A stretch of DNA of 64,000 bases from Lytechinus pictus (lineage: Eukaryota). The notes below the pieces were generated by a model that worked only from the letters and a program-made list of their open reading frames with translations, was not told where the DNA came from and ran no database searches. Positions 3,556 through 52,100 of this stretch are shown here, piece after piece (within the stretch, counting starts at the first letter, position 1; each line of letters begins with the position of its first letter). Location of the stretch: NCBI RefSeq assembly GCF_037042905.1, contig NC_087246.1, positions 53,878,001 to 53,942,000 of the forward strand, written 5' to 3'. Both the position numbers and the translations under genes were made by a program.

Positions 3556-3986
3556 TAGACCAAAAGCTTCGGTCTCTGTAATGTTCGTTGTTCCGCTGAA
3601 CTCCGTTAGCTCCACTCACCAATACAGAGACCGAAGTTCTAGCTCGATCTGTACAGGGACTCAATGGCCATATGTTTATGCATTAAGTTCCAATAAAACG
3701 GGGAAGTGAAGTTGCGCGACAGCCGAAGCAATTAGTTACTGTTTTTTCCCCTTTTAAGTTTATTTTCCCTTTTTTGTGCATTTTAGGACAAAACGGAATA
3801 ATAATATTTATTTGATACAGTTCTTTTCATATATTTTTATGAAATAAAGACAAAAATCGATGAGCGCCGTCTGGGGGATTTTGCATTGTTAACCCCGTAA
3901 TGATGGTTGCACCATAGCGAGCCGTCTGTGTACGAGGAGAAATAAAAATGTTTAAAAACTCGAAACAGACGGCTGCCAGCTGTCTA
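3556..3986 (+). mobile_element. TAGAC...GTCTA non-autonomous element with 9-bp TSD (Academ/AcademH-like), copy 1
   Basis: Flanks ATATGTAAT/ATACGTAAT; homologous to 9934-10231 (reverse) and 50458-50871. Confidence 0.75.
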
Positions 3987-4223
3987 ATACGTAATGAGCT
4001 TTGAGGACGATCTTTCCGATAGGCGTTTTAAAATTCTGCTCTTAATTATTGTCCATTTCTCATAAAATTTGTCTTATTTTATAGATAAAATGGCCATATC
4101 ATGTTTTAAGTAACTGGAGACCTAAAAAATTCCCTTATTCTCGAAACATTGCATCAGGTGATGTGCTTAATTGATCTTTTTTGTGCTCGCGTGCCAAACG
4201 TATACGTTGAGCTGAACGGGGAT

Positions 4224-4262
<39 letters not shown>

Positions 4263-5069
4263 CTACCTTTCCGAAATTAAAACGGTCCCTCGATCGGACA
4301 TAGTTATTTAGACGCAGGACAAATAATGCTCTGACAACCAAACTAACTTTTCGTCAGCATCAGTAAAAATGTGAATGGGCTTTTAAAAACTAATACTAAA
4401 ACTGATCTAAAATTGATCTTAGATCGATTTTAAAATTGATTTTGGAAATCGATTTTAAATTAATTTTAAAATCGTAATTCTATGTCCTGTTCTAATTAAC
4501 CGATTTTAAATTTTTTTACCACAATCGGCGCGATCACCTGCCAATCTTCGATCATGTCCCTTGAAGGAAAAATCGGATATAAAATATCGGCGTAGTTCTA
4601 GTTGCAGTGCGTGATCGTTCAGAACATATTTCAAGATTTTTTTGAGGTGCTAGCTATTTAGAGGTCGCATTAATCAGGGAGAAAGACGCGGTATTATCTC
4701 TGACGATGTTTACGAGGATAGATATCTTCTCTTCAACCTCGTGGTGATAGCGGACGCCGCCGTGAACTTTTAAAGGTCGTATTACCGACGGACATCACTG
4801 CACTACTCTCTTACCTCCTTTATGATGATAGACACTTCTCTTCAACCTCGTGGTGATAGCGGACCCCGCTACTTTTATATTTCTTCTTGGTTATCAAAAT
4901 TAAGTTAATTTCTGACGATAGTAATAAATTGATTTGAAAACGCTAGCTCCCCAAAGCATTTTAATAACATGTTCCGAATCATCGCGCTGATGCACCGATG
5001 CACGCCGTGTCCGACCGTGGCCGGGTCCCGCCTTGGGGCCATTGCATGCAGGCATGCATGTCCGCACAT

Positions 5070-6399
5070 CCCAGGACCAAAATCCAGTTAAAACCAATCA
5101 GGGCAAAACCAATTGAAACCAGTTGGCCAACTGGTTTCAATAGGGAAATTGGAACAACTGGTTCCAATTGAAAACCAGTTGCCAATTGGTTCCAGTTAAA
5201 ACCAATTGGTTCCAATTGAAAACCAGTTGCCAATTGGTTCCAGTTAAAACCAATTGGGCAACTGGAACCAGTTGGCAATTGGTGTCAATTTGTTCCAGTT
5301 GTTCCAATTTCCCTATTAAAACCAATTGGAGGCAACTGGTTTCAATTGGTTCCAGTTGAAACCAATTGGAGGCAACTGGTTTCAACTGGAACCAGTTGAA
5401 ACCAATTGGTTTCCAACTGGATCCAATTGGAACTTCCAGTTGGAATGAACTTAATTAGTTACAAATTAATTAGCATTTGCACTAATTATTGCTCATGCCA
5501 ACATAGAAGCAGTGTTATATGTCTATTAATACCAATGTAAAGGGCATTGATAAAATACAGACTTTCATATGTATATATTTATATGGAAGATCTTCAAATA
5601 TATGTATTTTTGTTTGATGTAATTTGGTAACAGTTAGTGGTGTACTAATTATCCTTTAATCTGTTTTAATTATAATCTATAACATTTATGAACATGGTTT
5701 TCACTGCTAAGTATTCTAAATACTTATCTTTAAAAAGTGTGGTACTTGAAATTGAAAAGAATTAAATAGATACATTGTTAATGATGATGAATCTCATAAA
5801 ACATTAATCTGTGCACACTGGCAGATAATATGCAAATTAACTGGTTTCAATTGGATCCAGTTGGGTAACTGGAAAATTTCCAATTGGAAACCAATTGGAA
5901 ATTATTTCCAGTTACCCAACTGGTTCCAGTTTTATTTCCAGTTACCCAACTGGTTCCAATTAGAATTCATTTCCAGTTACCCATCTTTCCAGTTAGAAGT
6001 CATCTCCAGTTACCCAATTCAACCAATTGGTACCAGTTAGGATTTCCAGTTACACAACTGCATGGTTCAAGTTAGGATTTCCAGTTGCCCAACTGGTTCC
6101 AGTTAGGATTTCCAGTTGCCCAACTGGTTCCAGTTGGGATTTCCAGTTGCCCAACTGGTTCCAGTTGGGATTTCCAGTTACTCAACTGGTTCCAGTTAGA
6201 AATCATTTCCAGTTGGAAGTCATTTCCAGTTACCCAACTGGTTCCAGTTAGGATTTCCAGTTGCCCAACTGGTTTCAATTGGTTTCAACTGGAAATTGTT
6301 AAATTCCAGTTAAAACCAATTGAAACCTGTTAAAACCAATTGAAACCAATTGAAACCAGTTGGAAATCCAACTGGTTTCAATTGGATTTTGGTCCTGGG
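5070..6399. mobile_element. EnSpm/CMC-like non-autonomous element with arrays of subterminal repeats
   Basis: Perfect 17-bp TIR CCCAGGACCAAAATCCA; 2-bp TSD AT/AT whose removal restores the host TIR (GCACATGGGAATGAC); dozens of CCAGTT/CCAACTGGTT units at both ends around an AT-rich core. Confidence 0.8.
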
Positions 6400-15400: not shown

Positions 15401-18400
15401 AGAGAAGATAGCTGAACAGTATCAGATGTATCGTGATGAGTGTGACGCTCGTAAGTTACTTGTCTCTGATATCAACGACCTTCGTTACCAGCAGGAGGAT
15501 TATCAGAAGGCCCAGGGTAACCAAGAGGTCCCTGCTGAAGCGAAGGAAGACCCCGTCAAGATGAAGATTGCTCTCAGGTAAGGGTTGAAGGGAAATGAAA
15601 CCCTGGAACAAGTTAGCTTGTGTGCAGACGTACAAAATCAAGAAAAAGAGCAATGAAAGTTTGAGAACGTATTAGGTACCGGTATACAATAAGAAAGAGG
15701 TGAGCATTTAAATGTGGAGAATGCTAATGCTACATGGAGATCCTCCCATTTGCCCTGTGATATAGCTGTCTGCTGTCACACTTGAAAGGAAAATGGAACC
15801 CTTGGAACAAGATAGCTTGTGCGAAAACATAAAAATCAAAGAAACAGATCAACGCAACTTTGAGAAAAATTGAATAAATGATAAGAAAGTTATGAAAATT
15901 CGAAGTTTAGATCATTATTGTCATGTAGATCCTCCAATCGGCAATGCGACAAAGATGTGTGATGTCACATGTGAACAACTTTCCCATTACTTTTGTTCAT
16001 ATTTCACTTAAAGTGCCTCTTTTATCACATCACATGGGCATTTTCACGGTAACTGACATTACACGGCACAATGTTTTCACACCTTTCATTGTGTGTATCT
16101 CTAAAACAACAAATGATGGGAGTTTGCTTTTGATAGAGTTAATAAAGTGAACCTTGCTGTATAATCTGATACTAAGTTTTCCTATGTAACCACATTTTTT
16201 TACGCAACAGCAAGCAAAAATGTGTCGGTAACTGACATTACGCAAAAGGACATGAAATTTCAGGGTGTTCATTAAAATTGAAATATCTCATGTCCCTGAG
16301 TAGATAGAGTAATAATTTGAATATGTAAATATACCTCTGTTACTAGGTTAAGATGTGTCAAAATATTAAACAATTCGTTTTTGTCTTTTGGGGGCTATGA
16401 TAATTTTTCCACAACCATGCTGGTAACTGACATTACGGTAACTGACATTACACTTAATTTGCCATAGAGATAACACATGGAAGTCAAATGTGTGGAATCA
16501 TTGCATTGTATCTTCTGTGCAGGGCTTCACATGAAAGTGAGCTTGATGTGGAAGTATACCCGAGTTTTTAGGAACATTTCAATGAAAAAACTTTTTCTTT
16601 TTTTAATTCCTTTCTTTGATTTGAACATTTTTATCATTACTTGTCGGTAACTGACAATACACATTAACATTTACCAGTGCTATATGATTTTCAAAGGCAT
16701 AATTTTCTTGGTACTTATATGTAAGGCTTTTTAAAATCATAAAAGTTTCATAATACTTCACATTTTTAATTATCAAAAGACAAGAAATGTATGTTTTACT
16801 TACTCGGGGGGGGGGGGGGGGGGGGGGTCATAGCAGCTACATGTTTTCCTATAGTAATTTAATATTGCATTGACTGTACACATGGATTTTACTGACTATA
16901 CACCCATAATATATTCATCAGTTTTATATTGACTTTTTAAACCTTTTCCTTCTCCAACCTCCCCCTCCCCTCAAAAAAGGCAAAATGAATAAGGGTCTCC
17001 TCCCCTAGGCTACATGTACCCCTCCCCTGAATCTCATGCAGCCATGTAGTTTAATTGATTTCTATTCTGGTCAGTGCAAGCGATGCTTGTTCATATCTGT
17101 CGGATTTCAATTCTCTTCATAATTTGTTTAATCATTTTCTTTGCTAATTTCTTTTTTAAGCTGTCATCAAAAAATAAACTCCAGCTTCTAAACTGAAACT
17201 GAACTATTTGTAAATTAGAAAAAAAAAACAGTTTTAGTAGATCCATGCAACATTGATCAGAACTGTCAAATTTCACTTTTCATCTATACTTGTAAACCAA
17301 AAACAAAATTGTATCACACATCCACACTACTAACAGGTATAAAAACCAGGAATTTACTTTTAGCGAGGCAATGCTCAAAAGAATCCTAGAAACTAAAAAA
17401 GGGACCCTGGAAATCCCCTTCATCACAATGTTAAGCTTTAAAAATGTTGCAGATTTAGGCAATAGGTTGGGAAAAGTACCCCCTACCACCCCCCCCCCCC
17501 CCCCCGAAAACCAAACAAAAAATTGTCTGATACAATTAGGTACTTGGTAAGTGCATGTACAAAACAATTTCATAGTAATTTTTTTTTGCCTGATGGGAAT
17601 GCAACTTCCTTCATAATTTCATATAGTATTCCTTGTGAACTATACCTTTTAAAAGTCAATAGCAAGCTCCTTCTGGTGTGACTTTTAAAGTGAAAGACTT
17701 AAATAACAAGTATACAATATTTCTTCACCATAAAATTGACCACATATTTGCATTTCAATATTGGTAACCAACGTTTTATCATGGTAACTGACATTACATC
17801 TCGGTAACTGACATTACATTTTCCACTTGGTAACTGACATTACATATATTTAATGGTACCCTATGGCTTCATTGTTAATTGGTAATCTTTAATTTTGGTG
17901 TAGAAGGGAGGGGTGTTACCTAGAGAGGAAATCTACCAAGTTTCATTTAATATATCCTCTTTTCCAGGAAATTAGAAAAAAAAGTTCATGTTTTCGGTAA
18001 CTGACATTACATACCATATCACATACTTCATCAATGTTTTTTTATCAGATGAATGAATTACTGGTGCTCCTTTCTGTGGGATTTTAAAAAGTGTTATAAT
18101 AGCAAGCTAAATCACAGGCGAAAACATCATGATCAAACCTGTTCTTTAAAAATCTGTCAAAACAAAATATGTATCAATATACTATTTTCAACACTAATTT
18201 GTATCCATACTTTGGCAGCCATTTTGAAATAAAAAATGGCTGCCAGAGTCGGAAATTTTTTTGTCTCGGAAACTTCAGGTCTTGTTTTATTAAAAAACAT
18301 AAAGCATTTGACATGAATATCAACTTGATTTTTTTGCCTCTGTGTCCATCTGTGGTGAAAATGCCCACTGTATGTATTCTTTCTATAGGAGGGCATGTAA

Positions 18401-24400: not shown

Positions 24401-27400
24401 TTCTATCCCGCCACCCAGGGTCTTGGTGATGATGTACCTGTGTACATGCGATATGAAGGCAAGCTGAGGAAGAGAAAGATGGATGAGAATGATGCTGGTA
24501 TCCTCATCAAAGAAATATGGAGGGAGAAAACAAAACAAAATCAAGAGGTAAGTTATGTCAACTCACATTAGCAGAAGTCTTAAGGAGCTTTGCAAGAAAT
24601 TTGCAATCGATATCATCCCCCCTCCTCTGCATGTTCCCATACCAATTTACCGATTTGCCTCCGCCAACAACTAGTCAACCATTTCCGTCAATCCGAAATA
24701 GTATCCAGATAGCCAAATTTTACTCAAATTTCTGACAGAGAATGTTTATTTTTCAGCATTTTTACCCTTGAACCTATTAATACAAACTGTCTAGTAATGG
24801 TAAGAACAGTCAATTTTTGTGAAAACTAAGATTGAGACAAGGATGTCGGTAAACTTGAGAAAGATAACTCTATAGAGAAATGTCACACTTGGCTCTCAAT
24901 GGGTTTATTTCATGATTTAACTTAGTACACAGTTGTCAATATGGACCAGAGTTTATGGATCATATCATGACCTCAACATCAAAGACAATATTGGAAAAGG
25001 AGGGAAGTAGATTGAAAAAGAAGAAGTATTTTCATCAGTAGGATGCTTATGAACCACAAATATATCAATAAGATATTGTTCGAGCATTTTTGTAACTCTC
25101 ATAAATCTCACTTTAGCTTTAAAGTTCAGATGCTTAATTCAAATCATTTGTTCCTGATTCAACCTAAAAAGTTGCGAGGCTTCCAAACTGTAGTGGTCCC
25201 TTCTATAATGTAATAGTGTGTTACATATTTTTGTGTATGAATGAATCAAATTTGATGTGAAATATTCCTTGATATCTTCTAGAGGGGAGAAGCAGGTCCA
25301 GAGCCTATGGATATCTTCCTTGCATCGTTCATGAGACAGAAGTATCCCGAGGAGAAACTTGCCTTTGAGTGGACATACATGCTGCTTAGTATACTAGAAG
25401 AGAATGAGAAGGAGAACCATCTAATGCTCTTTTACAAGACACTCATCGGAGAGGTGAGAGTTGATATGAGACTTCATTTTGTTTAACTAAGGCATCTTGG
25501 AGCGGTGATGGGTTAAATTGATGTGTTTGGTCATTGACTAGGCAGTTTGAAATGCTGTTAGAGATTTCTAAATTCTGTTCTGTATGTGGTATTGATCATT
25601 CATTATGCTGCTATATTATGACTTTTGAGAGGGAGGGGGGGGGGGTGGGGTAATAAACTTCCTAATTATTAGTCAACAAACATTTGGAAATAGCCATTAG
25701 ACAACTTATTTTATTCAAGTCTAGTATTTTGTAATTTCGTAGCGAAATGCTGTCATTTTGTGGCTTATCTGTTAGTATGCTTTGGCATGTATTTTTGTTC
25801 ACTTATATCGTTTAGTACTGCTATCAAATATTTGTGTTTGATTTTTCTTTTTCCTTTCTTTCAGATGGATGAAGATGTGTATCATAATCAGTTAGAGGTC
25901 TTATCAGAGCTCATGGCTGCATTCAAGAAGGCTGATGAAGAGGAAGGGGGACAGGTAAGTAACCATGAACAAGATGATGAAAATGAAGATGATGATTCTG
26001 ATGATGATTCTGATGATGATGTTGATGATGGTGGTGGTGGTGGTGGTGGATGGNNNNNNNNNNNNNNNNNNNNNNNNNNNNNNNNNNNNNNNNNNNNNNN
26101 NNNNNNNNNNNNNNNNNNNNNNNNNNNNNNNNNNNNNNNNNNNNNNNNNNNNNNNNNNNNNNNNNNNNNNNNNNNNNNNNNNNNNNNNNNNNNNGGATGA
26201 TTAAATTTCTGTGTTTCAAATTGCTTTTCATGTATATGAAAAATCTTTCATCTTTTTCCAGGGGAGTTTCAACAAGGATATCCTCGAGCTAGCCTTGCGA
26301 GAGTTCTTCCCCATCAAAGATGATGATAGCATTCAAGCCCTGGTCGATGCTGCTGTTCAAGAACTTCAGCCTGAAGATGAGACTAAACTTCTCTATGAAG
26401 AACTCTTCACAGAGGTGTGTTAATATCCATATTTTACTGTCATATCAGAATACTTGCCTCCAATTTTTTATTTGTAATTTGTTGCGAAAATCTTCATGTA
26501 AAATCGGTCATTGTCTGTTTGTCACTATATTCATGCTACATTGATTTTCACTGTATCAAATGTGAACTGGAATTCAATGTGTATATATTCAATGTAGTAA
26601 CATTGTTATATAAGGGCCCCTTAAGAAAAAGAAATGTAATCACTTGCGAAGTGGCAATAACTAATCACAATCATTCAACATTCCTGTTATCAACCAATCA
26701 GAAAAGTTCTTTCAATTAAAATCTTTGTACCTTTTGGACCCAGAATCCTCCGTCTTGAATTCCTCCTGTGACTGATTACTTCGTGTCCAGCAACAGATGT
26801 AATTGTCCTGTATTGTATGTGGGTATGTGTGTGATTAGATATTTTAAAGATGTGTGATAATCTACATTTGGGGACTTATCTCTGATGTCACCTTCCAAAA
26901 ACATGACCCGGGGCTTGAACCACAGATCTCAAAATCCATAATTTCTTTTTGCAGTTGGATTACGGGTGCATGCCAAAATGCTCAAACTGTCTTATTTTTA
27001 TCTCTTAATTCAGGAGGAGGACGGTACTGTTGGACCATTTATCTCACTTCTTAGATCTCAAGAACAAGAAGAGAAGATACAGTATGTAGATGACATCAGG
27101 AAAGAACTGGAAGGGAAAGAGTAAGTTTTAATATAACTGCTGAATTCATATCGAGTATAAAATATTTGATGCTCTGTTTCATAAGATTTGTAAGCATGTT
27201 TTTTTTTTACTGACAATAGATTAACATTGAACAACAGCTGGACTGGTTGACATTTGGTAACTAACTTTTCTAAATTCATATCGAATATAAAACGTTGATG
27301 TTCTGTTTCATCAGATCTGCCAACATGTTTATATGATATGAACTACTGACATTAGATCAATATTGAACAGTTACTCTACTGATTAACATTGAGTTACTAT

Positions 27401-31990: not shown

Positions 31991-32457
31991 CGTAGGTCAA
32001 ACAAGTATCAAGAATTGTCACGCTATAACCTAAGGAATTTCCCCTTTACTCTACTTTATTGTAACAAACAATTCCAGAATTCCGTCCAAAATGACCTCTG
32101 GGCTTTCCTGAAAAATCTGTATCTATATATGAAACCGTCCTAATGTTAGTAATTCAGCATGTATTATCCAGTATATTGTTATTATATGTATATAATGTAC
32201 AAATATATTTCACATTCTATTTAATAAAATTGTTTTAAATGTATGATTTGAATGTTTTCTTTCCATGTGCATTCTTACAGTTTATAGCATTTGATTTATA
32301 AAAAAAAGAATCTGTAATAGGAGTCAACTGCTTTTCTACCTTCCCTCCAAAGAAGATGCCATACAAATGGAAAATATGATTTTGATATTTTGGAGTCTTC
32401 TTGATAATTTGAATTTCAGTATTTATGCAAGTCTCACTTAACTTTCATGACCACACC

Positions 32458-34231
32458 CTATTTCTTATATATTTGAGCCATGACAGGTGGAGGATTAGTA
32501 TCGCCATTGTCCTTGATTGTTTTTAGGTAGTCAACGTAAGACGAAGGCAGGTTTGATTCTATAGCGCCCTCGATCATGACCTTCATGTAGTGGGGTGACG
32601 GAGGCTCCTCATTGGCTCCCTCTAAGTCAGGCGCCATGTGGTAGGTGTGGCATAAGTAGGTGTGGCCCTCTGGGGTTGTTACTGTGATTTCCGGTGAAGA
32701 GTATCGGTAGAGGGTCCTAGGATGAAAAAGGGGAATTTAGTAAGTCTGAAATTAAAATAATGAATGTTGGTAGTTGTACCCCACCTTTCTCTCTTTTCCA
32801 TCAAATCTCTTTGTTTGATTTTACACAATGATTTCATTAAAGTATGCACATTGGAACACCACTGAATAATAAACCGTTTGCAGGTGACATGTGAAATAAA
32901 AGAACAAGAGCAAAATAGACAACAAAAAAGATAAGAGATTGTAGATAAAGAGCGAGAAAGAAAGAAATCTGGTTCCCAGAGTTGTAGAAAGAATGTGCGG
33001 GCTGGTGGAGAAGTGTAAAGGAGAACAGAAGAAGATCGCACGTGTAAAGAAAGAGAAATATAATGGCAAAGGACATACCGAGAGAAGGAAAAAAAGGTGG
33101 GGGTTTATGAAAGTGAGAGAGAGGGTAGTGTATAACTCTTTATCCTTACGGATATAGTCCTTTGACATCAGTTTTATCCAGTCTCCATATTGCTCCCCAT
33201 ACATGAGCCTGTTGATCCTCTTCAATGGAACATAACGACCCTCTCCATTGACTCGTTTCGAGGGTCCATCCAGGGTAGCTGCGGAAATTCAATCTATAAC
33301 CCTATAAAATGAAGGGTGTGAGGTTGGAGAAAAAAGAAATAAAATTTGTTTGTAATTGCGATCTATTTTCGCACAAATTGAATTCTGTTACGTTTCTATC
33401 TCCCTCTTCCTCTCTCAAAATCTTTTACCGTCTCTCTCTTTCTCCGTCTCTCTTTATGTCTGTTTCTTTCTTTCTCTGTCTCTCTTTTACTACCTCCCCC
33501 CTCTCTCTTTCTTTTTCTCCCTTCTCTTTTCCATCCCTTTGTCTTTCTCTTTCCCATTAGACATATTAGTGTTCAGGGTATCTTGTTTGTACTTGGTTGA
33601 AAACTTTCACTTTGTTTAATAATACGAGAAAATACAATGGAATAAAATAAAACGGTAAAACGTTATACTAAGTTTGATCATCGATAAAAAGCCCCCCCCC
33701 CAAAAAAAAAGAACTTGCACCAAAAGCCAGACAACTGAGCAGCCATACCTCAAGTTTCGCTGGGCTTACAAACTCGGCTGATGGTACATAAAGATGAAAC
33801 CTCGACTTTAATAGATTGCTAGCGTAGCAGAAATAGAAGAATTTATCATTCGGAGCCCTGTAATTGAAGAAAGTCATTAAATTAAAGAAGTCAACAAGGT
33901 GCTTATGAGATAATTTCGAAGTAGCACATAGCATATTGTTTGATCAATAATAATAGGTTGCAGAGTCTCATATCCATATATAACCCCTCCCCACACCCCA
34001 CCAAAAAAAAAAAAAACAAAGAGAGAGAGAGAGACAGAGAAAAGAAAAATAAATGAGCACTTTTTGTTTTCTGTTGATGAATCCTTATTTCTTTATTGCG
34101 ATCCCACCATACACAAATTGGAATTGAATTTGATTTTTAAAATATCTCTGAAAACCTGTCTTCGCCATTCTTACGAGTTAATGTTGGGTAAAACGCGCAT
34201 ACATTATTATTGCTTACTTTTGCACACTCAT
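32458..34231 (-). CDS. GGCT-like paralog D, 177 aa, lacks the catalytic Glu (probable pseudoenzyme)
   Basis: complement join(34231-34218,33857-33749,33301-33150,32716-32458); GT-AG introns in phases 2,0,2. MSVQKAPNDKFFYFCYASNLLKSRFH...HVWGAIWRLDKTDVKGLYPTLYRYSSPEITVTTPEGHTYLCHTY...PSPHYMKVMIEGAIESNLPSSYVDYLKTIKDNG...*. Two exons are missing from the ORF track in this frame. Confidence 0.85.
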
Positions 34232-35773
34232 GGTTAAAGCTTTTTATTTTCACTCGTCACCAGTCTGGTGTTGGTGGCCCGTGTTGGTGACCCACTTCCT
34301 GAACCCCGGCAAAAACTTCTGAACATCAATGTTTGAGATCTGTGGTGGAATGAAATCACAAAATTACAAATAGACCTATAGTTGCTGAAATCGTGAAAAT
34401 TTTTAGCTAAAAACTGTAAAAGCTGAAAGCTACAATATTCCAAACTTATTCCAACTCGATCAGCCCCCTCCCTTTTTTATCTTCCGATCTTCTTCGCTAT
34501 CACTCCCCTCTCACTCATCCTCCCGCCATACTTCCACAAAGCCATCCAAATAGGATTCTCTTTTTCACCACCCCCTTGTCAATTCTCTATCCCTCCCTCT
34601 TTCTTTCCCATTTACACTCTACCGATTTTCTTCCCCGACTCCAGTACATTTTTTTTTCAACTTGAGTCATCCGTGATTGACTTGAATCATATTACAAGGT
34701 CCTCAGTGAAGAAGGGCTGTTGCTATAACTTTATATTCAAATTGAATTTCGATGTGGCATTCATAATGGCTTTATGACAAACAGCTAAGTAATGGGATAT
34801 ATGCGTATCTAATACCATACTATTCATGTACTATTATCATGGAGCTACCAGACAGGCTATTTATAGGCCTACTTACATTATAAGCACACCGACTGATAAA
34901 GGCTATATATCCACATGTACTCACCTGCACTCCTGTGGTGTCCACTTTGCTCTGCGAGTTCTGTTGTTCAAGTTGTTGACTCAACCATATCTTTGTAGCT
35001 AAACACATGAGTCCCCAATCTTATTTTATGATTGCTAGACTGGCCTACGTTTGTGTAAATTTGAAAGGCTGGTTTGTCCCGTGGATGTGAAAGGGATCGA
35101 TTAGAGGGGAGTACTGTACTTAGAGCCTTGTACAGTTGGAACAAACAACTAGGCCTATATTTCCCAAGATTGTCGTATATCCCGTGACTATAACGGGTTT
35201 GGGGGGACGGGGGGTATGACATAAACATTATAGCGAATATTAAATTCAGTGATATATCAAGTCTCGTCGAAATTTAAGTTATCACCAGTTTACATAATCA
35301 CCGATAATACCGCCCCCCCCAAAAAAAAAGTCACGCCAAGGGGAAACTCCCAGAACGAAACCCCGCGATGACAATATAAAGGGGGCGTGGCACAAGTGGG
35401 CGTGGTTCGTGGTCAGTACATTAACCTGCAGTATTACCATTAGTGCTGTGTGGTTATATTGTATCAAGTCAAAGTAAAAAATGGAAGGTATTTCTGATAT
35501 TATCACTGTGTTATTTCAACAGTATGAGGCGCTAGGCAATAAATGCCCCTTTAGCTTCAACCTCCCCATCCCTGTTCCTACCCGAGACAGACACAGCTAG
35601 CTGTCGCGGTTATCAAGCTTTAGGTCGACGTGAACTTTCATAACCCTCCTTTTTAACAGGGACCTCTTAATTCTTTATGGGACACGTCCAAGTTCAAAGT
35701 ACGATATATCAACCTATCCTTCGTATCCGTGGTAGGACAGGGTAAACAAATCTGTCACAGATAGTACCCCTAT

Positions 35774-36582
35774 CAGAGGCGTCGATCCGGGGGGCAGGGG
35801 GTGATCGCCCCACCAATGGAAATATGGGGGGGGGGGCAAACATATCGTTTTGCCCAATAATTCAGGATGTGCAAAATAAAATAAGATTGCAATGTTACAC
35901 AGAAATCGGCAAGTGAGATTGAGATACGTACGTATCTCGTTCTTTACTTAAAATCGTGCTCAAAATTTCCGTTTTTCAGATTGGAATATAAAAATTTTCA
36001 GCTCGCGCTTCGCGCTTGCATCATTTCTTTAGCAAAACCCCATACTTTTCATGATTTAATAGGTGAATAGAATGTCCCGTTTTCAGTTCTAAACCTCAAA
36101 AGAGTTCCTGCTTCGATTTGCAATAATCGTTTTCAGAAATATCAAAATTTTCAGCTCGCGCACTTCGCGCTCGCATCTATTGTTCTTTTAGATACCAATC
36201 TTAATCATTGATACCAAAAATGCTTAGAATATCAAGCTTTCAGGTCAGAATATAAAGAGATTTCAGCTCGCTCTCGGCACTCGCATTATCTGTGCAGTAA
36301 GATATGAGTCACTAAAAACAGTCAAACAGTGTTTGAGATATGTGTCTCTTTCTCATGAGTCATATATATATATATATATTAATGAGGCAAAGTGGTAATG
36401 CATTGTACTTAGTTCCAACAGTTTATTTTGAATTCCAAATTTTCGACGTTAAACATACGTCTTCCTCAGGGATACAATAAATATATATCGATATATACGA
36501 TATATATATATCGAGCGCCTTTGGAACGTTGCTTCATGATTTTGCCCCCCCCCCCAATCTGAAAAATGGATCGACGCCCTTG
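35774..36582. mobile_element. hAT-like MITE
   Basis: CAGAGGCGTCGATCC ... GGATCGACGCCCTTG; 8-bp TSD ACCCCTAT/ACCCCGAT; internal GCTCGCGCTTCGCGC repeats. Confidence 0.75.
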
Positions 36583-37995
36583 ACCCCGATACAAGGGTGT
36601 AGGCTGGTTTGAGCACGGGGAGGTGCAAATCATGGGGAGGTGGCACTAAAGTTGGGAAAATTAGCTGTTGAAAGCAGAAGAAGGGGTAACAAATTACGTT
36701 TTTGCTTATACCAGTGTCGGAACTCCTCTGCCTCAGCGGGAGGGTACACGTGCACCCAGCGCACCCCAGCCTACTCCCTTGCTATATCTCTTCTATTCAA
36801 GAAAAATCGTTTTATGTAATAGAAGCGACTAACAATGTTGTTAAGGTCAGTCTAGTGTCAACTACATGCAGAAAACACAGTAACACGAAAATAGAAAAAT
36901 ACTTTTTTATGTCTCAAATAAAATATTTAATTCATCTACAAGAATATCTATTGAAAAATGTGATAAGAAAAGCAATGAAGCCACTACTAAATTCCTTTTA
37001 TAAAAATCCGCTAACATAAAATAACCATTCGCAAAATAAATTTAATCGGTATTGCATACCTTTAAAGTTGCAATTTATAGCTGGTGATATATTTTTTATC
37101 TGAATTAGTCAGAATGAGTATTACATTGATAGCCTTTATCACACATATTAATTTTTCTTCTTTTTTTAAAAGGACACAATTTGAATGGATTCAACGTGAT
37201 CATCTAGTTTTCTGTAAAGCTGTTGTAAATTATAATTCATCCACGAAAATACTCAATCATACTCTGGAATTATGTCTGGTCATCTAGACTTACGATTTTC
37301 AAGCATACAAAGGAACTTTTCACGTACGATTCGTCCCGCCAATAACTTAGAGAACTCTTTGGAAGCATCCTAGATTGGAGGGTTAAACGCTTTATGTCTT
37401 GCTTGAGAATCATGGATCCAGATGGCCAAATTTATTATAATAATCTGCTTGAGAATTTCTGTATTGATTAGAATGATATTAAAATGGATTAATGGACCGG
37501 TATGAATATACATAAAGTCTAGCTATTTCGAAGCACACATTTTTTGTGGATTTTTTTTGGGGTCATTTTCAATAGTGTATTTTCACCTTGATCTACAGCA
37601 ACTGGTCGATGGGATCGGAGTAAAATTTCACAACTAATTTTTTGCATTCGTAGATACAGATGACCTTCATGCATCAAACATTGTTTTCTTAAGTACATAT
37701 CATTTTTACAGTATATAATTATAATAATAATAATACATATGATTTATATAGCGTCTTTTCCATTTTGATTAAATGCTCAAGGCGCTTATATAAGAGCAAA
37801 ACATAAAAGTAAAGAGAACTAAGAGAAGTACAAGAAAGAGTGAATTACAAAATAATGAGGAAAGTGTCTGTCTTCAAACCTATAGTAGGCCTACCTGCTG
37901 GTATATACGACATATAGAAACTGATATGTTGCAGATTCGGGGCTTCAGTTCACGATGCTCGATTTTTAATAGAATAGATAAAATTAAGTAATTGA

Positions 37996-39482
37996 TCATT
38001 TGAATATTTCATTCATGATATCTGGTGGGTTAGTCTGTCCATTGTGCTTGATTGACCTTAAGAACTCGACGTAGGTTTTTGGAAGGCCAGACTCTACGGC
38101 GCCCTCTGTGATGACCTTCATGTAGTATGGTGATGGAAGTTCTTCCTCTTGGCCATTCATCATCTGATAGGTGCGACAAACGTATTCCATACCCTCTGGT
38201 GACGTCACCGTGACGTCAAATGCTTTATAGCTAGATTCCGGCCTTTGAAAAATAATCACACAAAACAATGGAAATCATATAATTATTTTCTTTACTTTTA
38301 CAATTAAGAGATCTATATTGCAGTGTTGGCGCCATGAGACTCAATGGACAGTGCATGTGTTCTGCAAGTTACTCTATTATTATCTTTACCAATATTTGGT
38401 TATGTAATTCCTAATGAACCATATAGTCGTGAATTTTTTTTTTCTTTCATCTTTCTCTCCACTTTTTTAGATTCAGTATATTACTGTAAAAGTCTGTAAA
38501 AGTGTCTGGCAACATAAAGAATTTTCACTTTAGTATAACATGGCCCGTTTCCTGTGTATTTTTTCCTTGACCTGACATAAACCAAATTGAAGTGTGCTTA
38601 CGGATCTAGATTAGCCAGATCTGATTTGTGGAGACGCCATACTGCTCCCCAGACGTGACCTTGAGGACTCTCTATAATAGAGGCAGGGGCTCCGTTCCAT
38701 AGACTTTCTTTTACACTCCATCCGGGGTACACTTGAAAACAAAGTCTGTAACCCTATAAATATCGTTAAAAATATAAATATTAATGAAAAATATCCGATG
38801 TCGGTTTTTTCAAGAATTTCTTCATTAAGGTAATGCCACCATCAGGGCGGGTAAAATGTTTGACAAGCAGCAAAAATACAAATTGTTATTCAAACATAAT
38901 CCTTGATACACCCTGTTAACGGTCGTCGATCTATGGCTAGTGGCTTTGGAGTATAAAGTCGCCATGTGCTAAGTTCTAAATACCTTGATGTCTTGCTCTT
39001 TAAATACAATGCCACTCTTATAGCAAATTATCATAACAGTTTTTCATTATGAATAGCGGTCCTAGTAAATAATAACCCTTTTGCAAACTTATGAATAGTA
39101 TATTGCATACTCAATGTTATTACCTCTAGTTTAGCTGGACCAACTAGCTCCGCGGTTGGGGTACCAATGTGTATACGGGCTCTCAGCAGGTTGCTGGCAA
39201 ACCCAAAATACAGAAATGAATCCCCATCATTACTAATCAGATAAAAATAGAAAAATAAAAAAATGAAAAGGAATGAAAGACACATTATTTTGTGTATGTC
39301 ATCCGGGGTATTATAATAAGCATACATTAATATCAATGGTAAGGCCAAAATAATATAAATGAAAGGTTTCAGTACAGTATATACTGGCGGTGTTACAAGA
39401 TTCTGCATGTAATTTGTAATCAAAATGATAATTACCAAGGAATCGGTTAAATTTCAACTTACCTCAGTGCACCACTGTCCAT
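37996..39482 (-). CDS. GGCT-like paralog C, 175 aa
   Basis: complement join(39482-39463,39232-39124,38753-38602,38242-37996). MDSGALSNDGDSFLYFGFASNLLRARIH...HVWGAVWRLHKSDLANLDPPESSYKAFDVTV...CRTY...PSPYYMKVITEGAVESGLP. Phases 2,0,2. Confidence 0.88.
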
Positions 39483-47600: not shown

Positions 47601-48311
47601 CAGCTCAAATTTACGACCTTGAGCATCACGAATGCGATATTGAACACAATTGCGTTTTGAAACGTCTTTAAATTTGCAGTCGCACTGGAAGCCAACAAAA
47701 ACAGGAGCCAGAACTGACCTTTCTTGTGATGGGTCAAACTGAGCACTAAAGCTGCATTCACGAAAGCGGGAAATTTAAAGACGATCAACATATAAACGGC
47801 TTTATATTTTCGACAATGAACGGTGCACCGCTGATCGTGTTTGTGTTCGGTCTTTTGGAATTGAGTTTTTAATCATGATTCATGTTGCTGTTTAAATTTT
47901 CAAATCGACATCGAACACACCCTTACTTTGGGGATCTTAGGTGGCTGTTCACAAATTATCATTTTCAGTTACCATAGTTAATCATAGACCAGTACTGCAA
48001 ATCAAAATCAAGGATTTCACTGAAATTGTCCACTTTCATGAAAATTCCCTGTAATTACTACCGTGCTAAAAATGAAAGTGAGAATGTACCTCAAGTTTAG
48101 CTGGACCAACTAGCTGCGCAGTAGGATTGTGCACATGAATCCTAGCTTTCAACATGTTGCTACCGTACCCAAAGTAGAGGAAGGTATCATCACTACTCCT
48201 GATAATAAATGACAATAAAAGAAAATAGAAATAATAATGCAGCTTATCTACTCTGCACAGAGTTCTCAAGACACTGGACTCATACTTTATTCCCACTGTC
48301 GTGCAATCCAT
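44615..48311 (-). CDS. GGCT-like paralog B, ~180 aa
   Basis: complement join(48311-48286,48198-48090,46682-46540,44879-44615). MDCTTVGIKSSDDTFLYFGYGSNMLKARIH...HLWGVVWRLHISDRDHLDSQESEYSVLDVTV...CRTY...PSPHYMKVLIEGAKQS. The first mini-exon is less certain than the others. Confidence 0.87.
45754..46400. mobile_element. Tc1-like MITE in a GGCT-B intron
   Basis: TA|CAGTTGAGGCCAGAAGTTTACATACACC ... GGTGTATGGAAACATTTGGCCTCAACATG|TA. Confidence 0.75.
46749..46830 (+). mobile_element. Degenerate tRNA-SINE head (another remnant at ~14687-14790)
   Basis: GGTGATCTAGTGGTT...GTGGGTCTGAATCCCAG resembles the head of the 42389 copy. Confidence 0.45.
47415..47922. mobile_element. PIF/Harbinger-like MITE
   Basis: ~45-bp imperfect TIR GGGTGCGTTCAATGTCGGTTT... 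/ ...AAATCGACATCGAACACACCC; flanks TTT/TTA. Confidence 0.6.
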
Positions 48312-49124: not shown

Positions 49125-52100
49125 TTACTCGGTATCGATTAAATTCATGATTTCCACCTGTCCGCTGTATCCGTTATCCTCAATCGATCTCAGCCATTCA
49201 AGGTAATACTCAGGGAGAGAGTTTTGATCGGCCCCTTTCCTGATCACATCCATGTATTGAGGTGAAGGGGTGCTCTCCTTAAAGTCTATTATGCTGTATG
49301 TCCAACATGTATGACGGGTACCATCTTGTGATGTCACAATGACTTCCTTTCGTCTGTAAACAACGCCTTTACCCTCTTGACTGTAGTGAGTTAATACAGA
49401 ATACAATGGAGAGATAATAGGGAGCTATGTAGCATTTGTAAGAAATTATACACATTGATATTCTGATTGAGTTTTATTAAGTACTCATTCAAATATTTGC
49501 AAAAGTATATTACACAAATGAATGACACAAACTACAAATACATAGAATTTAAAAGAAAGACCACAGAAATTTTGAAATCTTGAATACAACTAGTGTAGTA
49601 AGTTTCAAAGGTACACCATAAACTTGACGTTTCGACAAGTGTGTTCTTGTTGTCTTCATTTATTTTCCCAAGAATTTAAATGAGAGTTGAGTTATCATCC
49701 AAGTTGCTAGAAATCTGGGGTTTTCTATTAAAGCTTTCTTGTGTATACATGCTAAATTCAGGTCGCATTAACTGCAAACAATCAACCAGTTTAATGACAT
49801 ACTGCAGTTTATCTATGATTTAAAAAAAAAGGTCGATGACAACCTGAAAGCTTGCCACACATAGCCAAAAGTAATATTTACGAACTGGATAAACTACTCT
49901 CAGGTAAAAAAAAAACAATTATATACCGTATTACTTCATGTATAATAAATCATTGTACATTACTGCATCTCTATTATTAAGTTGTAGGATTGTAAATTAC
50001 TAAATCTCTATTAGGTTGTAGGATTATTACCTACAAATAAATTTGAGTAACCAGACCTACATAACAATAGAATCAACTTACAAATCCAGACTTGCGAGAT
50101 CCTTTTCCTCCAATCTCCACACTATGCCCCACACAGAACTCCCATTCCTTTCTTCAACAGTAGCGACACCACCATGCCATCTATCACTCATCCATTCGCT
50201 TTGTCCTCCAAAACATAGCTTGTGATCCTGAAAAATTGAAAGACAAGCCACAAGAAAGATCACACCATTTGAATAGAAATTATTATGAAGCACTTTTAAA
50301 GTTTCCTAATTAATGTAAGACAGGTCTTTCTTGCCTCTTGGCATGAATGAAAACAATGAAATCAAGTCCAAGACAAGAGGAATTGGATGAGTGGGTCGTC
50401 AACGTCATCATCATTCATGGTTGTGGGGAAAAAGGGAAGATATTACAGCCTCTAACTTAGACCAAGAGCTTCGGTCTCTGTTATGTTGGTTGTTCCGCTG
50501 AACTCTGTTGGCTCCACTCACCAAATACAGAGACCAAAGTTCTAGCTTGATCTGTACAGGGACTCAATGGCCATATGTTTACATATCAAGTTCGGATAAA
50601 ACTGGGAAGGGAAGTGAAGTTGCGCGACAGCTGAAGTAAGTCACTGGTTTTCCCACTTTTAAGTTTATTTTCCCCCGTTTTGGTGCATTTCAGGCCAAAA
50701 CGGAATAATTTCTATTTGGGTAGTTCTTTTTATATATGTTTATGAAATAAAGACAAAAAATCGATGAGCCCCGTCGGGGGGATTTTGCATTGTTAACCCG
50801 TCTGTGTACGAGGAGAAATTAAAAAAAAAATGTTTAAAAACTCCTCGAAACAGACGGCTGCCAGCTGTCTAGATCTACCTCAGTCTTACTTAGAGAGGTA
50901 GATTTACACATTTAAAATATTATTCTTCTTGAAATTAATTCTCATTTGTAAAATGTTTTATTATTAAAAGGTAATTAGTATCAACTATAATTAAGCCTAG
51001 GCTAGACATAGGATGGGGAGTCGGGTGTCCGGACAGTTTATATTCTTGAGGCCTTCTTTTTTGTCTTTGGATTGCACTAAAAATATGAATTCGATAGTTG
51101 TAATCATCTTATATTTTGTTCTCTATAATATTTCCTAACATTTTGTAATAAAAATTGATGAAATTTCACTTGTAAATTTTTCCAAATGACGTTCTAAATT
51201 GATCGTCCGGACACACAACAACTGGGTATACCAGTAGTATGGTAGTGGATCGTATTACCGAACGCTTTTCATGAATTCAATCATATCAAACACATTATTC
51301 TCATAAAATTCACCAAACTTTCACCATAAATACACAATTACCTACAAAATATAAATATGTAAAAATTTTGCCGAAATCGTTTTTCCTTTTTACGATATTA
51401 GCTTCCAATCGGACCCCTCTTCGCATGTGAAATATTTTGGTCACTTGAAAAAGGTATCGTATTACCGAACATGTGTTATCTATGGGAAAATTTGAGAAAA
51501 CAACAAAATCACTGATTAGCTATTTTGACCATATTTTATTATTCTAAGAATATTAAGACTTTGAAAATGTGTTTTTTTACAATTTTTCATCATCTTTCTA
51601 TTCAAGTTCTCTTTGGAAGGATGTTGCAAAATTTTGAGCGTATGAAATTATTTTCTGATGCGTATGATGCGCGCATTCGGTAATACAAGGCCGGTCGGTA
51701 ATACAATTACTCACTATACACCCGAATATCGCCCGGTAGGATGGGGGGTTGGGTGTCCGGACACGTAACAGAAATGAAGCCTTGTTTTTATCTCAGGAAT
51801 AAACCAAAAATATAGGTTGAATAGTTTTTTTTCACCATCAATATTTGTTCTTTATAATATTTTCTTATATTCTGTGCTAAAAAGAATTAAAGACATTGCT
51901 TGTAAACTTTTCAAAATTGAGAGTAACGTCATGTGTCCGGACACCCAACCCGTCCGGACACACAACCACTGGGTACAGGCCGCTATCTACGGTGAGCCAA
52001 ACGACAGTCACTTAACGCCCAACGCTGCGGGAGGACTGTCTGTTGAGTTCCGATGAAATAAAATTGTTTTACCTTTAATTCTGCGACGTCAACAAAAACA

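What the first reader, a model, noticed from the sequence alone, without database searches (positions are those of the whole stretch)
32458..34231. GGCT-D: intact gene that has lost the catalytic glutamate (candidate pseudoenzyme)
Seen: splicing 33150 to 32716 (CC|G) gives ...KGLYPTLYRY..., placing Leu at the catalytic Glu position and Tyr at the conserved Asp of LDxxE. Gly of YGSN is Ala, and the W.G..A motif becomes WRGSLC. Yet all four exons keep frame and canonical splice sites, the internal exons match paralog C in length (109 and 152 nt), and PSPHY/EGA/LP..Y are retained despite heavy divergence. Known: substituting Glu98 abolishes human GGCT activity. Since GGCT is dimeric, D could be a ligand-binding sensor, a dominant modulator of its neighbours, or an enzyme with different chemistry (inference).
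Basis: partly seen in the sequence, partly recalled or inferred. Interest (0 to 1): 0.72.

Follow-up and report, generated by a model that had tools for sequence, protein, structure and literature searches.

The report
Conserved sea-urchin GGCT paralog lacking catalytic glutamate
One of four neighbouring sea-urchin copies of a glutathione-cycle enzyme gene (GGCT) has replaced its catalytic glutamate with leucine, yet it is transcribed, correctly spliced, kept in urchins about 40 million years apart and evolves more slowly than its intact-looking neighbours, so it is a working protein with a changed, probably non-catalytic, role and not a dying gene.

Summary
On the minus strand, four GT..AG coding exons (14, 109, 152 and 259 nt) give a 177-aa protein of the GGCT family (Pfam AIG2_2, 55 bits against a cut-off of 27). 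Leu94 sits at the position of human Glu98, Tyr91 at Asp95 and Ala17 at Gly23.

- **Expression:** an RNA contig with no mismatches and raw RNA-seq junction reads show exactly the predicted splicing, including the 33150|32716 junction, plus an extra 5'UTR exon.
- **Species:** the genome is almost surely Lytechinus pictus.
- **Orthologs:** those in L. variegatus and Strongylocentrotus purpuratus carry the same LYPTLY loop.
- **Constraint:** D is the most conserved of the four paralogs (89% identity against 76-81%). Its dN/dS is 0.05-0.08, against 0.11-0.18 for A and B. Between the two copies of the array in this assembly it is 0.13.
- **Family context:** the glutamate is kept in all 43 other full-length family representatives examined.
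- **Structure:** an AlphaFold model (pLDDT 91.5) matches human GGCT at TM 0.86-0.90.

A decaying pseudogene is rejected. The most likely reading is a selected pseudoenzyme, or a paralog with a new function, whose binding pocket is largely kept. Loss of activity, the ligand and any partners remain untested.

The gene is already annotated as "GGCT-like", but I found no paper on the Glu loss. The scan had noted the same stretch and the array on this same window (s1-320094, s1-320059).

The parts
34925..35163 (-). 5' non-coding exon of the D transcript. This is a minimum extent, because the RNA contig starts here.
   Evidence: X1 RNA contig, record 1, piece 34925-35163. It is joined to 34339 by a GT..AG intron (34340-34924).
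34218..34339 (-). Exon holding the rest of the 5'UTR and the start codon. The coding part is 34231-34218 (MSVQ + 2 nt).
   Evidence: The 34218|33857 junction is seen in the X1 contig and in 2 X21 reads.
33749..33857 (-). Coding exon 2 (109 nt). It encodes the YASN loop (33826-33815; Gly23-equivalent is Ala17) and the D-specific Cys15 (33829-33827).
   Evidence: The 33749|33301 junction is seen in the X1 contig and in 3 + 6 raw reads.
33150..33301 (-). Coding exon 3 (152 nt). It encodes WRGSLC (Cys65 at 33232-33230) and ends with Leu90-Tyr91 (33157-33152), where Tyr91 replaces the conserved Asp of LDxQE.
32458..32716 (-). Coding exon 4 (259 nt including the stop codon). Thr93-Leu94-Tyr95 lie at 32715-32707, and Leu94 (CTC, 32712-32710) is at the position of the catalytic Glu98. 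The exon also retains Tyr97, Glu101, Tyr117 and the PSPHY, EGA and LP..Y motifs.
   Evidence: The 33150|32716 junction is seen in the X1 contig (depth 17.2, no mismatches) and in 1 X22 read.
32300..32457 (-). 3'UTR. The RNA contig runs about 490 nt further, beyond 32300, which was outside the stretch laid.
   Evidence: X1 record 1 covers 32300-32715 at record positions 624-1039 of 1527.

Best explanation
GGCT-D is a functional paralog kept by selection. It is the last gene of a four-gene tandem GGCT array in a sea urchin, almost surely Lytechinus pictus.

**Origin (shown).** D arose by duplication of a C-like gene before Lytechinus and Strongylocentrotus split, about 40 My ago. A burst of change then hit the catalytic loop (LDxQE became LYPTL) and two small pocket-wall residues (Ala to Cys at positions 15 and 65). 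Since then D has been under strong purifying selection.

**Present state (shown).** It is made as its own spliced mRNA and is predicted to keep the GGCT fold.

**Mechanism (inferred).** Without the general acid/base Glu it no longer performs the canonical gamma-glutamyl cyclotransfer. It keeps most of the residues that bind the gamma-glutamyl / 5-oxoproline moiety: Tyr16, Ser18, Asn19, Tyr97, Tyr117 and Tyr135. It therefore most likely acts as a pseudoenzyme. It would bind such a ligand, or a protein partner, without turning it over, in the way of a sensor, sequestering protein or regulator.
For: **Gene model and family**
- The gene model is intact and the protein matches Pfam AIG2_2.
- Leu94 sits at the Glu98 position, shown by ungapped alignment to solved human GGCT.
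- Glu is present in all 43 other full-length family representatives and absent only in the D clade.
- D-specific changes at conserved columns are limited to G17A (shared with C), A65C, T66S, D91Y, Q93T and E94L. The change is targeted, not general decay.

**Expression**
- A spliced RNA contig without mismatches and raw junction reads match the model. First mates lie mostly on the + strand, as expected for a minus-strand gene.
- The ortholog is also found as spliced transcript contigs in two Strongylocentrotus-type runs.

**Conservation**
- The same LYPTLYRY loop is present in L. variegatus, two further L. pictus records and three S. purpuratus records.
- Lp-Sp protein identity is 89% for D, against 79% (A), 76% (B) and 81% (C). 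Fisher p = 0.002 for D against A-C pooled.
- dN/dS is 0.046-0.080 for D, against 0.11-0.16 for A and 0.18 for B. dS is similar for all three, about 0.7-1.0.
- D against the second copy on contig C25 has 9 synonymous and 5 non-synonymous differences. dN/dS is 0.13, and the binomial P against neutrality is 6e-4.

**Tree and structure**
- The tree has a long D stem (0.54) followed by the shortest within-clade branches.
- The AF2 model has pLDDT 91.5 and matches 3CRY/2RBH at TM 0.86-0.90.

**Literature**
- Glu98 is the acid/base of human GGCT, and YGS plus the Tyr residues line the cavity (PMC7022552).
- E98A is used as the enzyme-dead form (PMC13039682).
Against: - No activity or binding data exist. 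Inactivity is inferred only from the missing Glu.
- ChaC2 shows that a GGCT-fold enzyme can use an alternative Glu (PMC7022552), so catalysis through another residue is not excluded. D has new, fully conserved Tyr91, Tyr95, Cys15 and Cys65 near the site.
- The modelled loop 91-100 has the lowest confidence (pLDDT 72).
- RNA depth in the two raw-read runs is low, about 1-3x with 6% of each run read.
Confidence: 0.6

Rival explanations
1. D is still an enzyme, with altered chemistry or a different substrate. The new, fully conserved residues around the site (Tyr91, Tyr95, Cys15, Cys65) would take over as base or nucleophile, or the pocket would now act on a different gamma-glutamyl or thiol compound.
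For: - Purifying selection is very strong, and the changes are targeted to the active-site loop and to two pocket-wall positions, not scattered.
- The pocket Tyr residues and the Ser/Asn loop are retained.
- ChaC2 gives a precedent for an alternative catalytic residue (PMC7022552).
Against: - No acidic residue specific to D lies near the loop. Glu101 is homologous to human Glu109 and is shared with paralogs A-C.
- The Glu is invariant in all other sampled members.
- I found no known GGCT-fold enzyme that works without it.
Confidence: 0.25
2. D acts mainly through protein contacts. It would form heterodimers with the catalytic paralogs A-C (human GGCT crystallises with two chains) and tune or poison their activity.
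For: - D sits beside its catalytic paralogs in an array that is conserved between genera.
- D is conserved more strongly across the whole protein than its paralogs. This is typical of proteins with constrained surfaces; the link to surfaces is an inference.
Against: - It was not tested here.
- In runs X21 and X22, D exons are covered while the last exon of C has zero depth. Co-expression with C is therefore not obligatory.
- D shares only 39-55% identity with A-C.
Confidence: 0.1
3. D is a young, still-intact pseudogene drifting towards decay.
For: Only the loss of the catalytic Glu and Asp, and the low RNA depth in two runs.
Against: - The same loss is fixed in species about 40 My apart, with intact reading frames.
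- dN/dS is 0.05-0.13 while dS is 0.7-1.0.
- D is the slowest-evolving of the four paralogs.
- Correctly spliced mRNA is found in two genera.
Confidence: 0.03

Closest known systems
Human gamma-glutamylcyclotransferase (GGCT / C7orf24; PDB 2PN7, 2RBH, 3CRY)
   Same: - Same fold: TM 0.86-0.90, rmsd 2.0 A, 35% identity.
- Same Pfam family.
- Retained Tyr/Ser/Asn of the YGSN loop, the Tyr105, Tyr125 and Tyr139 equivalents, and the PSPxY and GA motifs.
   Different: - Glu98 to Leu, Asp95 to Tyr, Gln97 to Thr and Gly23 to Ala.
- Ala21 and Ala69 equivalents are Cys.
- The loop after the catalytic position is 4 residues shorter. B, C and many other members share this shorter loop.
Paralog C of the same array (window 37996-39482, minus strand), sister of D
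   Same: - Same 4-exon structure with internal exons of 109 and 152 nt.
- Same Gly-to-Ala change in YGSN and the same short loop.
- 55% identity. The C+D grouping has weak support (83/41); the B+C+D clade is strongly supported at 100/99.
   Different: - C keeps LDPPE with the Glu.
- C evolves about twice as fast as D between Lytechinus and Strongylocentrotus.
ChaC2 (glutathione-specific GGCT-fold enzyme) with two alternative catalytic Glu residues
   Same: GGCT fold. It shows that the catalytic acid/base can be supplied from a different position (PMC7022552).
   Different: ChaC2 still uses a Glu. D has no D-specific acidic residue in or next to the loop.
Non-catalytic uses of the GGCT-like fold: allophanate hydrolase / urea amidolyase C-terminal domain (4ISS, 5I8I) and Paulinella transit-peptide part 2 (9I09, 9I08)
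   Same: They appear as weaker structural matches to the D model (TMq 0.37-0.48). As far as I know, they use the fold for something other than gamma-glutamyl cyclotransfer. That reading rests on my own knowledge and the entry titles, and was not tested here.
   Different: These are distant (7-15% identity), are domains or targeting elements, and are not recent duplicates of a true GGCT. D is a close relative of canonical GGCT with most pocket residues intact.

Membership tests
GGCT protein family (Pfam AIG2_2 / GGACT; GGCT fold) | Significant match to the family profile, above the curated cut-off | tested here: met
   AIG2_2 scores 55 bits against a cut-off of 27, E = 1.1e-14. GGACT scores 22.3 against 22.8, just below its cut-off.
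GGCT protein family (Pfam AIG2_2 / GGACT; GGCT fold) | GGCT fold | tested here: met
   AF2 model of the C25 allele (P0145, 5 residues different from the window protein): pLDDT 91.5, pTM 0.88. Foldseek to 3CRY/2RBH gives TM 0.86-0.90 and E = 1e-17.
GGCT protein family (Pfam AIG2_2 / GGACT; GGCT fold) | YGSN / YGSL substrate-binding loop | tested here: inconclusive
   D has YASN. Tyr, Ser and Asn are kept and Gly is Ala. Ala also occurs in paralog C and in several Glu-bearing members (P0001, P0054, P0055, P0065), so it may be tolerated.
Catalytically competent gamma-glutamyl cyclotransferase | Catalytic acid/base Glu (human Glu98) in the LDxQE loop | tested here: not met
   Leu94 is at that column in all six D-clade proteins of the alignment and in the window's own protein, and Glu (once Asp) is there in the 26 non-D sequences of the alignment. 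No alternative splice form or hidden exon exists.
Catalytically competent gamma-glutamyl cyclotransferase | Measured formation of 5-oxoproline from gamma-glutamyl substrates | not testable with these tools
   This needs a recombinant protein assay.
Pseudoenzyme (selected, catalytically impaired homolog of an enzyme) | Loss of a key catalytic residue while the fold and reading frame stay intact | tested here: met
Pseudoenzyme (selected, catalytically impaired homolog of an enzyme) | Maintained by purifying selection across species, and expressed | tested here: met
   dN/dS is 0.05-0.08 (Lp against Sp) and 0.13 (the two assembly copies). Identity is 89% over about 40 My. Spliced RNA is found in both genera.
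Pseudoenzyme (selected, catalytically impaired homolog of an enzyme) | Demonstrated lack of the ancestral activity | not testable with these tools
   Inferred only from the missing Glu. E98A is used as the dead form of human GGCT (PMC13039682).
Non-functional pseudogene | Disabling mutations or neutral evolution (dN/dS near 1) | tested here: not met
   There are no stops, frameshifts or broken splice sites in the window copy, the C25 copy or the orthologs, and dN/dS is far below 1.

The most novel reading that the evidence does not exclude
D is the first natural Glu-less member of the true GGCT subfamily with a selected function of its own. It would be either a thiol/Tyr-based enzyme with new chemistry, or a ligand-sensing regulator of the gamma-glutamyl cycle. 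Its remodelled pocket (Cys15, Cys65, Tyr91, Tyr95, all fixed in D orthologs and absent from every other sampled member) would read out glutathione-related or other gamma-glutamyl/thiol metabolites in sea-urchin cells.
Probability: 0.2. Interest if true: 0.7.

Novelty: new variant of a known kind. Interest (0 to 1): 0.5.

Why it matters
GGCT-fold enzymes are defined by the YGS(N/L) loop and one catalytic Glu. Here a close relative of canonical GGCT has dropped that Glu, yet it is the most constrained copy in a conserved four-gene array. That is a clean natural case of an enzyme duplicate taking on a new, probably non-catalytic, role.

It lies in species with good experimental tools: L. pictus and S. 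purpuratus have genomes, transcriptomes, embryo injection and knockouts. Activity, ligand binding, dimer partners and loss-of-function phenotype are therefore all directly testable.

It also warns that the automatic label "gamma-glutamylcyclotransferase-like" on these records overstates what the protein can do.

Tried and rejected
**Searches that gave little**
- **Word-indexed protein search.** I ran it with the spliced D protein, with the exon-4 open frame by reference, and with the S. purpuratus ortholog. Only insect and fish GGCTs at 35-38% identity came back, or nothing.
- **Representative search.** I then used exon 4 by reference. From that point on I did not send the spliced D protein to any other tool. 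Structure work used the database protein P0145, the allele on contig C25.
- **P0003 and P0004.** No DNA could be fetched for either ENA assembly contig. P0004 is an exon-4-like fragment 59% identical to D. Whether it is a deeper D relative or another paralog is open.
- **Status of contig C25.** I searched the own genome with 20 kb of flank to decide whether C25 is an alternative haplotype. Dispersed repeats swamped the result. That C25 is a haplotig is a plausible reading (93-96% identity including introns, same gene order), but it is not shown.

**Ideas rejected**
- **Alternative acceptor or micro-exon restoring LDxxE:** none exists. The upstream AG at "ttcag" would shift the frame.
- **Compensating Glu in SSPEI:** rejected as D-specific. 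It equals human Glu109 and is Glu or Asp in A-C.
- **Pseudogene reading:** rejected.

**Not done**
- Distances in the model (for example Cys15 to Cys65) could not be measured, because coordinates are not returned.
- Organism B contigs (run X6) cover exon 4 plus intron with 12 differences in 352 nt. They are probably DNA of a close relative. Their letters were not listed, so I did not use them beyond that.

Full report
**1. The observation**

The minus strand of 32458-34231 holds four coding exons: 34231-34218, 33857-33749, 33301-33150 and 32716-32458. Their lengths are 14, 109, 152 and 259 nt, 534 nt in all. They stay in frame, and every intron begins GT and ends AG. The 177-aa product matches Pfam AIG2_2 at 55 bits against a cut-off of 27.

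I aligned each exon by reference to solved human GGCT (2PN7, 2RBH):
- Y16-A17-S18-N19 falls on Y22-G23-S24-N25.
- L90-Y91-P92-T93-L94 falls on L94-D95-E96-Q97-E98, without gaps from the invariant Leu.
- E101 falls on E109.

So Leu replaces the catalytic Glu, Tyr replaces the conserved Asp, and Ala replaces the Gly of YGSN. No peptide of the form L[DN]..E exists in any minus-strand frame of 32300-34400. The Tyr91 codon also lies inside exon 3, so no alternative acceptor could restore the motif.

**2. The surroundings**

D is the last of four tandem minus-strand GGCT genes:

| Paralog | Window position | Catalytic loop | YGSN loop |
|---|---|---|---|
| A | 52198-49125 | LDFQEG | YGSN |
| B | about 48311-44615 | LDSQES | YGSN |
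| C | 39482-37996 | LDPPES | FASN |
| D | 34231-32458 | LYPTLY | YASN |

C has the same internal exon lengths as D, 109 and 152 nt. The Gly-to-Ala change is therefore shared by C and D. It also occurs in other Glu-bearing members, so it does not by itself mean lost activity.

The whole array occurs a second time in the assembly, on the 1.487-Mb contig C25, in the same gene order. D and its C25 copy are 93-96% identical across introns and exons.

**3. Which organism**

An exhaustive profile search with exon 4 followed by a cluster look-up gave annotated proteins:
- XP_063971293.1 "gamma-glutamylcyclotransferase-like [Lytechinus pictus]". It lies on a contig of 1,487,000 bases, the length of C25, and is identical to my translation of the C25 copy.
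- XP_054748386.1 (L. pictus).
- XP_041454586.1 (L. variegatus).
- XP_789027.1 and XP_798993.1 (S. purpuratus).
- XP_030831451.1 (S. purpuratus), a 704-aa read-through model that strings A-B-C-D together.

The window is therefore almost surely L. pictus, and the four-gene array is conserved in S. purpuratus. One paper gives the divergence of these two species as about 40 My (PMC11688612).

**4. Expression and splicing**

In run X1 (organism A), a 1527-nt contig at depth 17.2 lies on the window with no mismatches. It has five pieces: 34925-35163, 34217-34339, 33748-33856, 33149-33300 and 32300-32715. All skipped parts are GT..AG on the minus strand.

This confirms the three coding introns exactly, including 33150|32716. 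It also adds a 5' non-coding exon, and it continues about 490 nt past 32300 as 3'UTR.

Raw reads from two 2026 rRNA-depleted RNA runs show the same joints:

| Run | Intron 1 reads | Intron 2 reads | Intron 3 reads |
|---|---|---|---|
| X21 | 2 | 3 | 0 |
| X22 | 0 | 6 | 1 |

First mates lie almost entirely on the + strand, as expected for a minus-strand RNA in a standard stranded library. Depth is low, about 1-3x with about 6% of each run read. In those two runs the last exon of C has no coverage, so D is not merely co-transcribed with C.

The Strongylocentrotus-type ortholog is also assembled as a continuous 180-aa ORF in transcript contigs from two runs (L012, L013).

**5. Selection**

All six D-clade proteins carry the same YFCYASN, WRGSLC and LYPTLYRY. 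Three comparisons show the constraint.

*Between L. pictus and S. purpuratus*:

| Paralog | Protein identity | dN/dS (NG86 / YN00) |
|---|---|---|
| A | 78.9% | 0.11 / 0.16 |
| B | 76.2% | 0.18 / 0.18 |
| C | 80.8% | not available (no coding DNA) |
| D | 89.0% | 0.046 / 0.080 |

- The identity difference between D and A-C pooled gives Fisher p = 0.002.
- The dN/dS values compare the window's coding sequences with the transcript contigs L012 (D) and L014 (A and B).
- dS is similar for D, A and B, at about 0.7-1.0, so the constraint acts on the protein.

*Between the window and the C25 copy*:
- D has 9 synonymous and 5 non-synonymous differences, giving dN/dS 0.13 and dS 0.094. Under neutrality the binomial P is 6e-4.
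- For comparison, dN/dS is 0.42 for A, 0.06 for B (exons 2-4) and 0.14 for C.

*Maximum-likelihood tree*:
- The B+C+D clade has 100/99 support and the D clade 100/100. Within it, C and D group together only weakly (83/41).
- The D stem is long (0.54, against 0.25 for C).
- The Lp-Sp path is shortest for D (0.11, against 0.23-0.30 for the others).

The pattern is a burst of change followed by tight constraint.

**6. What changed and what did not**

In an alignment of 32 sequences, D differs from a 75%-or-better family consensus at only six columns:
- G17A, shared with C.
- A65C.
- T66S, shared with B and C.
- D91Y, Q93T and E94L.

Residues fixed in D and found in no other sampled member include Cys15, Cys65, Tyr91, Thr93 and Leu94.

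Invariant or nearly invariant family residues are all kept: S18, N19, R24, W60, G62, G77, L90, Y97, C114, Y117, P131, S132, Y135, G142, A143 and P149.

The ChaC2 structural paper describes the GGCT-fold cavity as formed by the YGS loop and three Tyr residues plus the acid/base Glu, which is Glu98 in human GGCT (PMC7022552). By sequence position, D keeps the loop Tyr and Ser and Tyr residues at the corresponding positions, and loses only the Glu. E98A serves as the enzyme-dead human form (PMC13039682).

Among 43 other full-length representatives, the Glu column is Glu in every one.

**7. Structure**

An AlphaFold2 model of the C25 allele, built with the 32-row alignment, has mean pLDDT 91.5 and pTM 0.88. 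The weakest block is residues 91-100, at 72.

Foldseek places it on human GGCT (3CRY, 2RBH, 2I5T) at TM 0.86-0.90, rmsd 2.0 A and 35% identity. YkqA, ChaC2, the AIG2-like proteins and GGACT follow. The fold is kept. I could not inspect the pocket geometry because coordinates are not returned.

**8. Interpretation**

*Shown:*
- D is an intact, expressed and correctly spliced gene.
- It is conserved in at least two urchin families.
- It has strongly constrained protein evolution and lacks the catalytic Glu and the neighbouring Asp.

*Inferred:*
- D cannot carry out the canonical cyclotransfer.
- Because the ligand-binding residues remain, it binds a gamma-glutamyl / 5-oxoproline-like ligand or a partner protein without turnover.

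I put about 0.6 on this pseudoenzyme reading. I put 0.25 on an enzyme with altered chemistry using the new Tyr or Cys residues, 0.1 on a mainly heterodimeric modulator of A-C, and about 0.03 on a decaying pseudogene.

**9. Comparison with what is known, and novelty**

By homology and fold, D is a member of the GGCT family. It fails the defining catalytic feature, so it should not be filed as a gamma-glutamylcyclotransferase enzyme.

The gene models already exist in NCBI under the automatic name "gamma-glutamylcyclotransferase-like". I found no paper on sea-urchin GGCT paralogs or on a GGCT pseudoenzyme. I class it as a new variant of a known kind, of moderate interest. Loss of a catalytic residue in a lineage-specific duplicate is a common theme. 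What is neat here is that the "dead" copy is the most constrained of the four, and that it sits in a tractable model organism.

The scan had already noted this stretch and the array on this same window (s1-320094, s1-320059).

Noticed in passing
window 49125-49130 (end of paralog A) and 48198 (B exon 2); L014: The stop codon TAA of paralog A overlaps a consensus splice donor (GA|GTAAGA, GT at 49128). Splicing from there into B exon 2 would stay in frame and give a two-domain A-B protein. Exactly such a 346-aa A-B fusion is assembled as a transcript contig in a Strongylocentrotus-type run (L014) and is annotated in S. purpuratus (XP_011675323.1). RNA support in L. pictus was not checked.
   Followed up: partly
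window 48286-48311; G000:C25:979329-979359: My tentative 26-nt first coding exon of paralog B carries a 5-nt insertion in the C25 copy. The insertion creates an in-frame TGA and shifts the frame. Either this exon is not B's real start (see the A-B fusion above) or the C25 copy of B lacks an independent start.
   Followed up: partly
window 33827-33829 and 33230-33232: Two cysteines (Cys15 next to the YASN loop, Cys65 in WRGSLC) replace Ala or Gly. They are fixed in all D orthologs and absent from every other sampled family member. Whether they lie close together in the pocket could not be measured.
   Followed up: partly
window 35700-36900 and 37700-37900: These stretches between D and C have very high summed depth in all four runs, up to tens of thousands in contig word depth. 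Many variant letters, back-joints and loose ends are present. This is a multi-copy repeat or mobile element, not part of D.
   Followed up: no
window 16035-18367; also 3002-5069 and 5070-6282: Dispersed repeats. The 2.3-kb element at 16035-18367 has at least 25 copies at 95-99% identity on many contigs of the genome, which suggests a recently active mobile element.
   Followed up: no
window 26054-26194: A run of 141 N (assembly gap or masked). I left it untouched.
   Followed up: no
P0004 (ENA assembly ERZ26222911, 4996-nt contig): This is an exon-4-like GGCT fragment, 59% identical to D exon 4, with D-like AIES, YVD, NGDT and PPP motifs. It sits next to a 7TM receptor gene, in the same assembly that holds a near-S. 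purpuratus B-like exon (P0003). It could be a further C/D-type paralog or a deeper D relative. No DNA was available.
   Followed up: partly
window 32500-32699: In run X21 only, this bin over D exon 4 shows reads with the first mate on the minus strand (depth 2.8), opposite to the rest of the gene. This may be antisense or unstranded signal.
   Followed up: no
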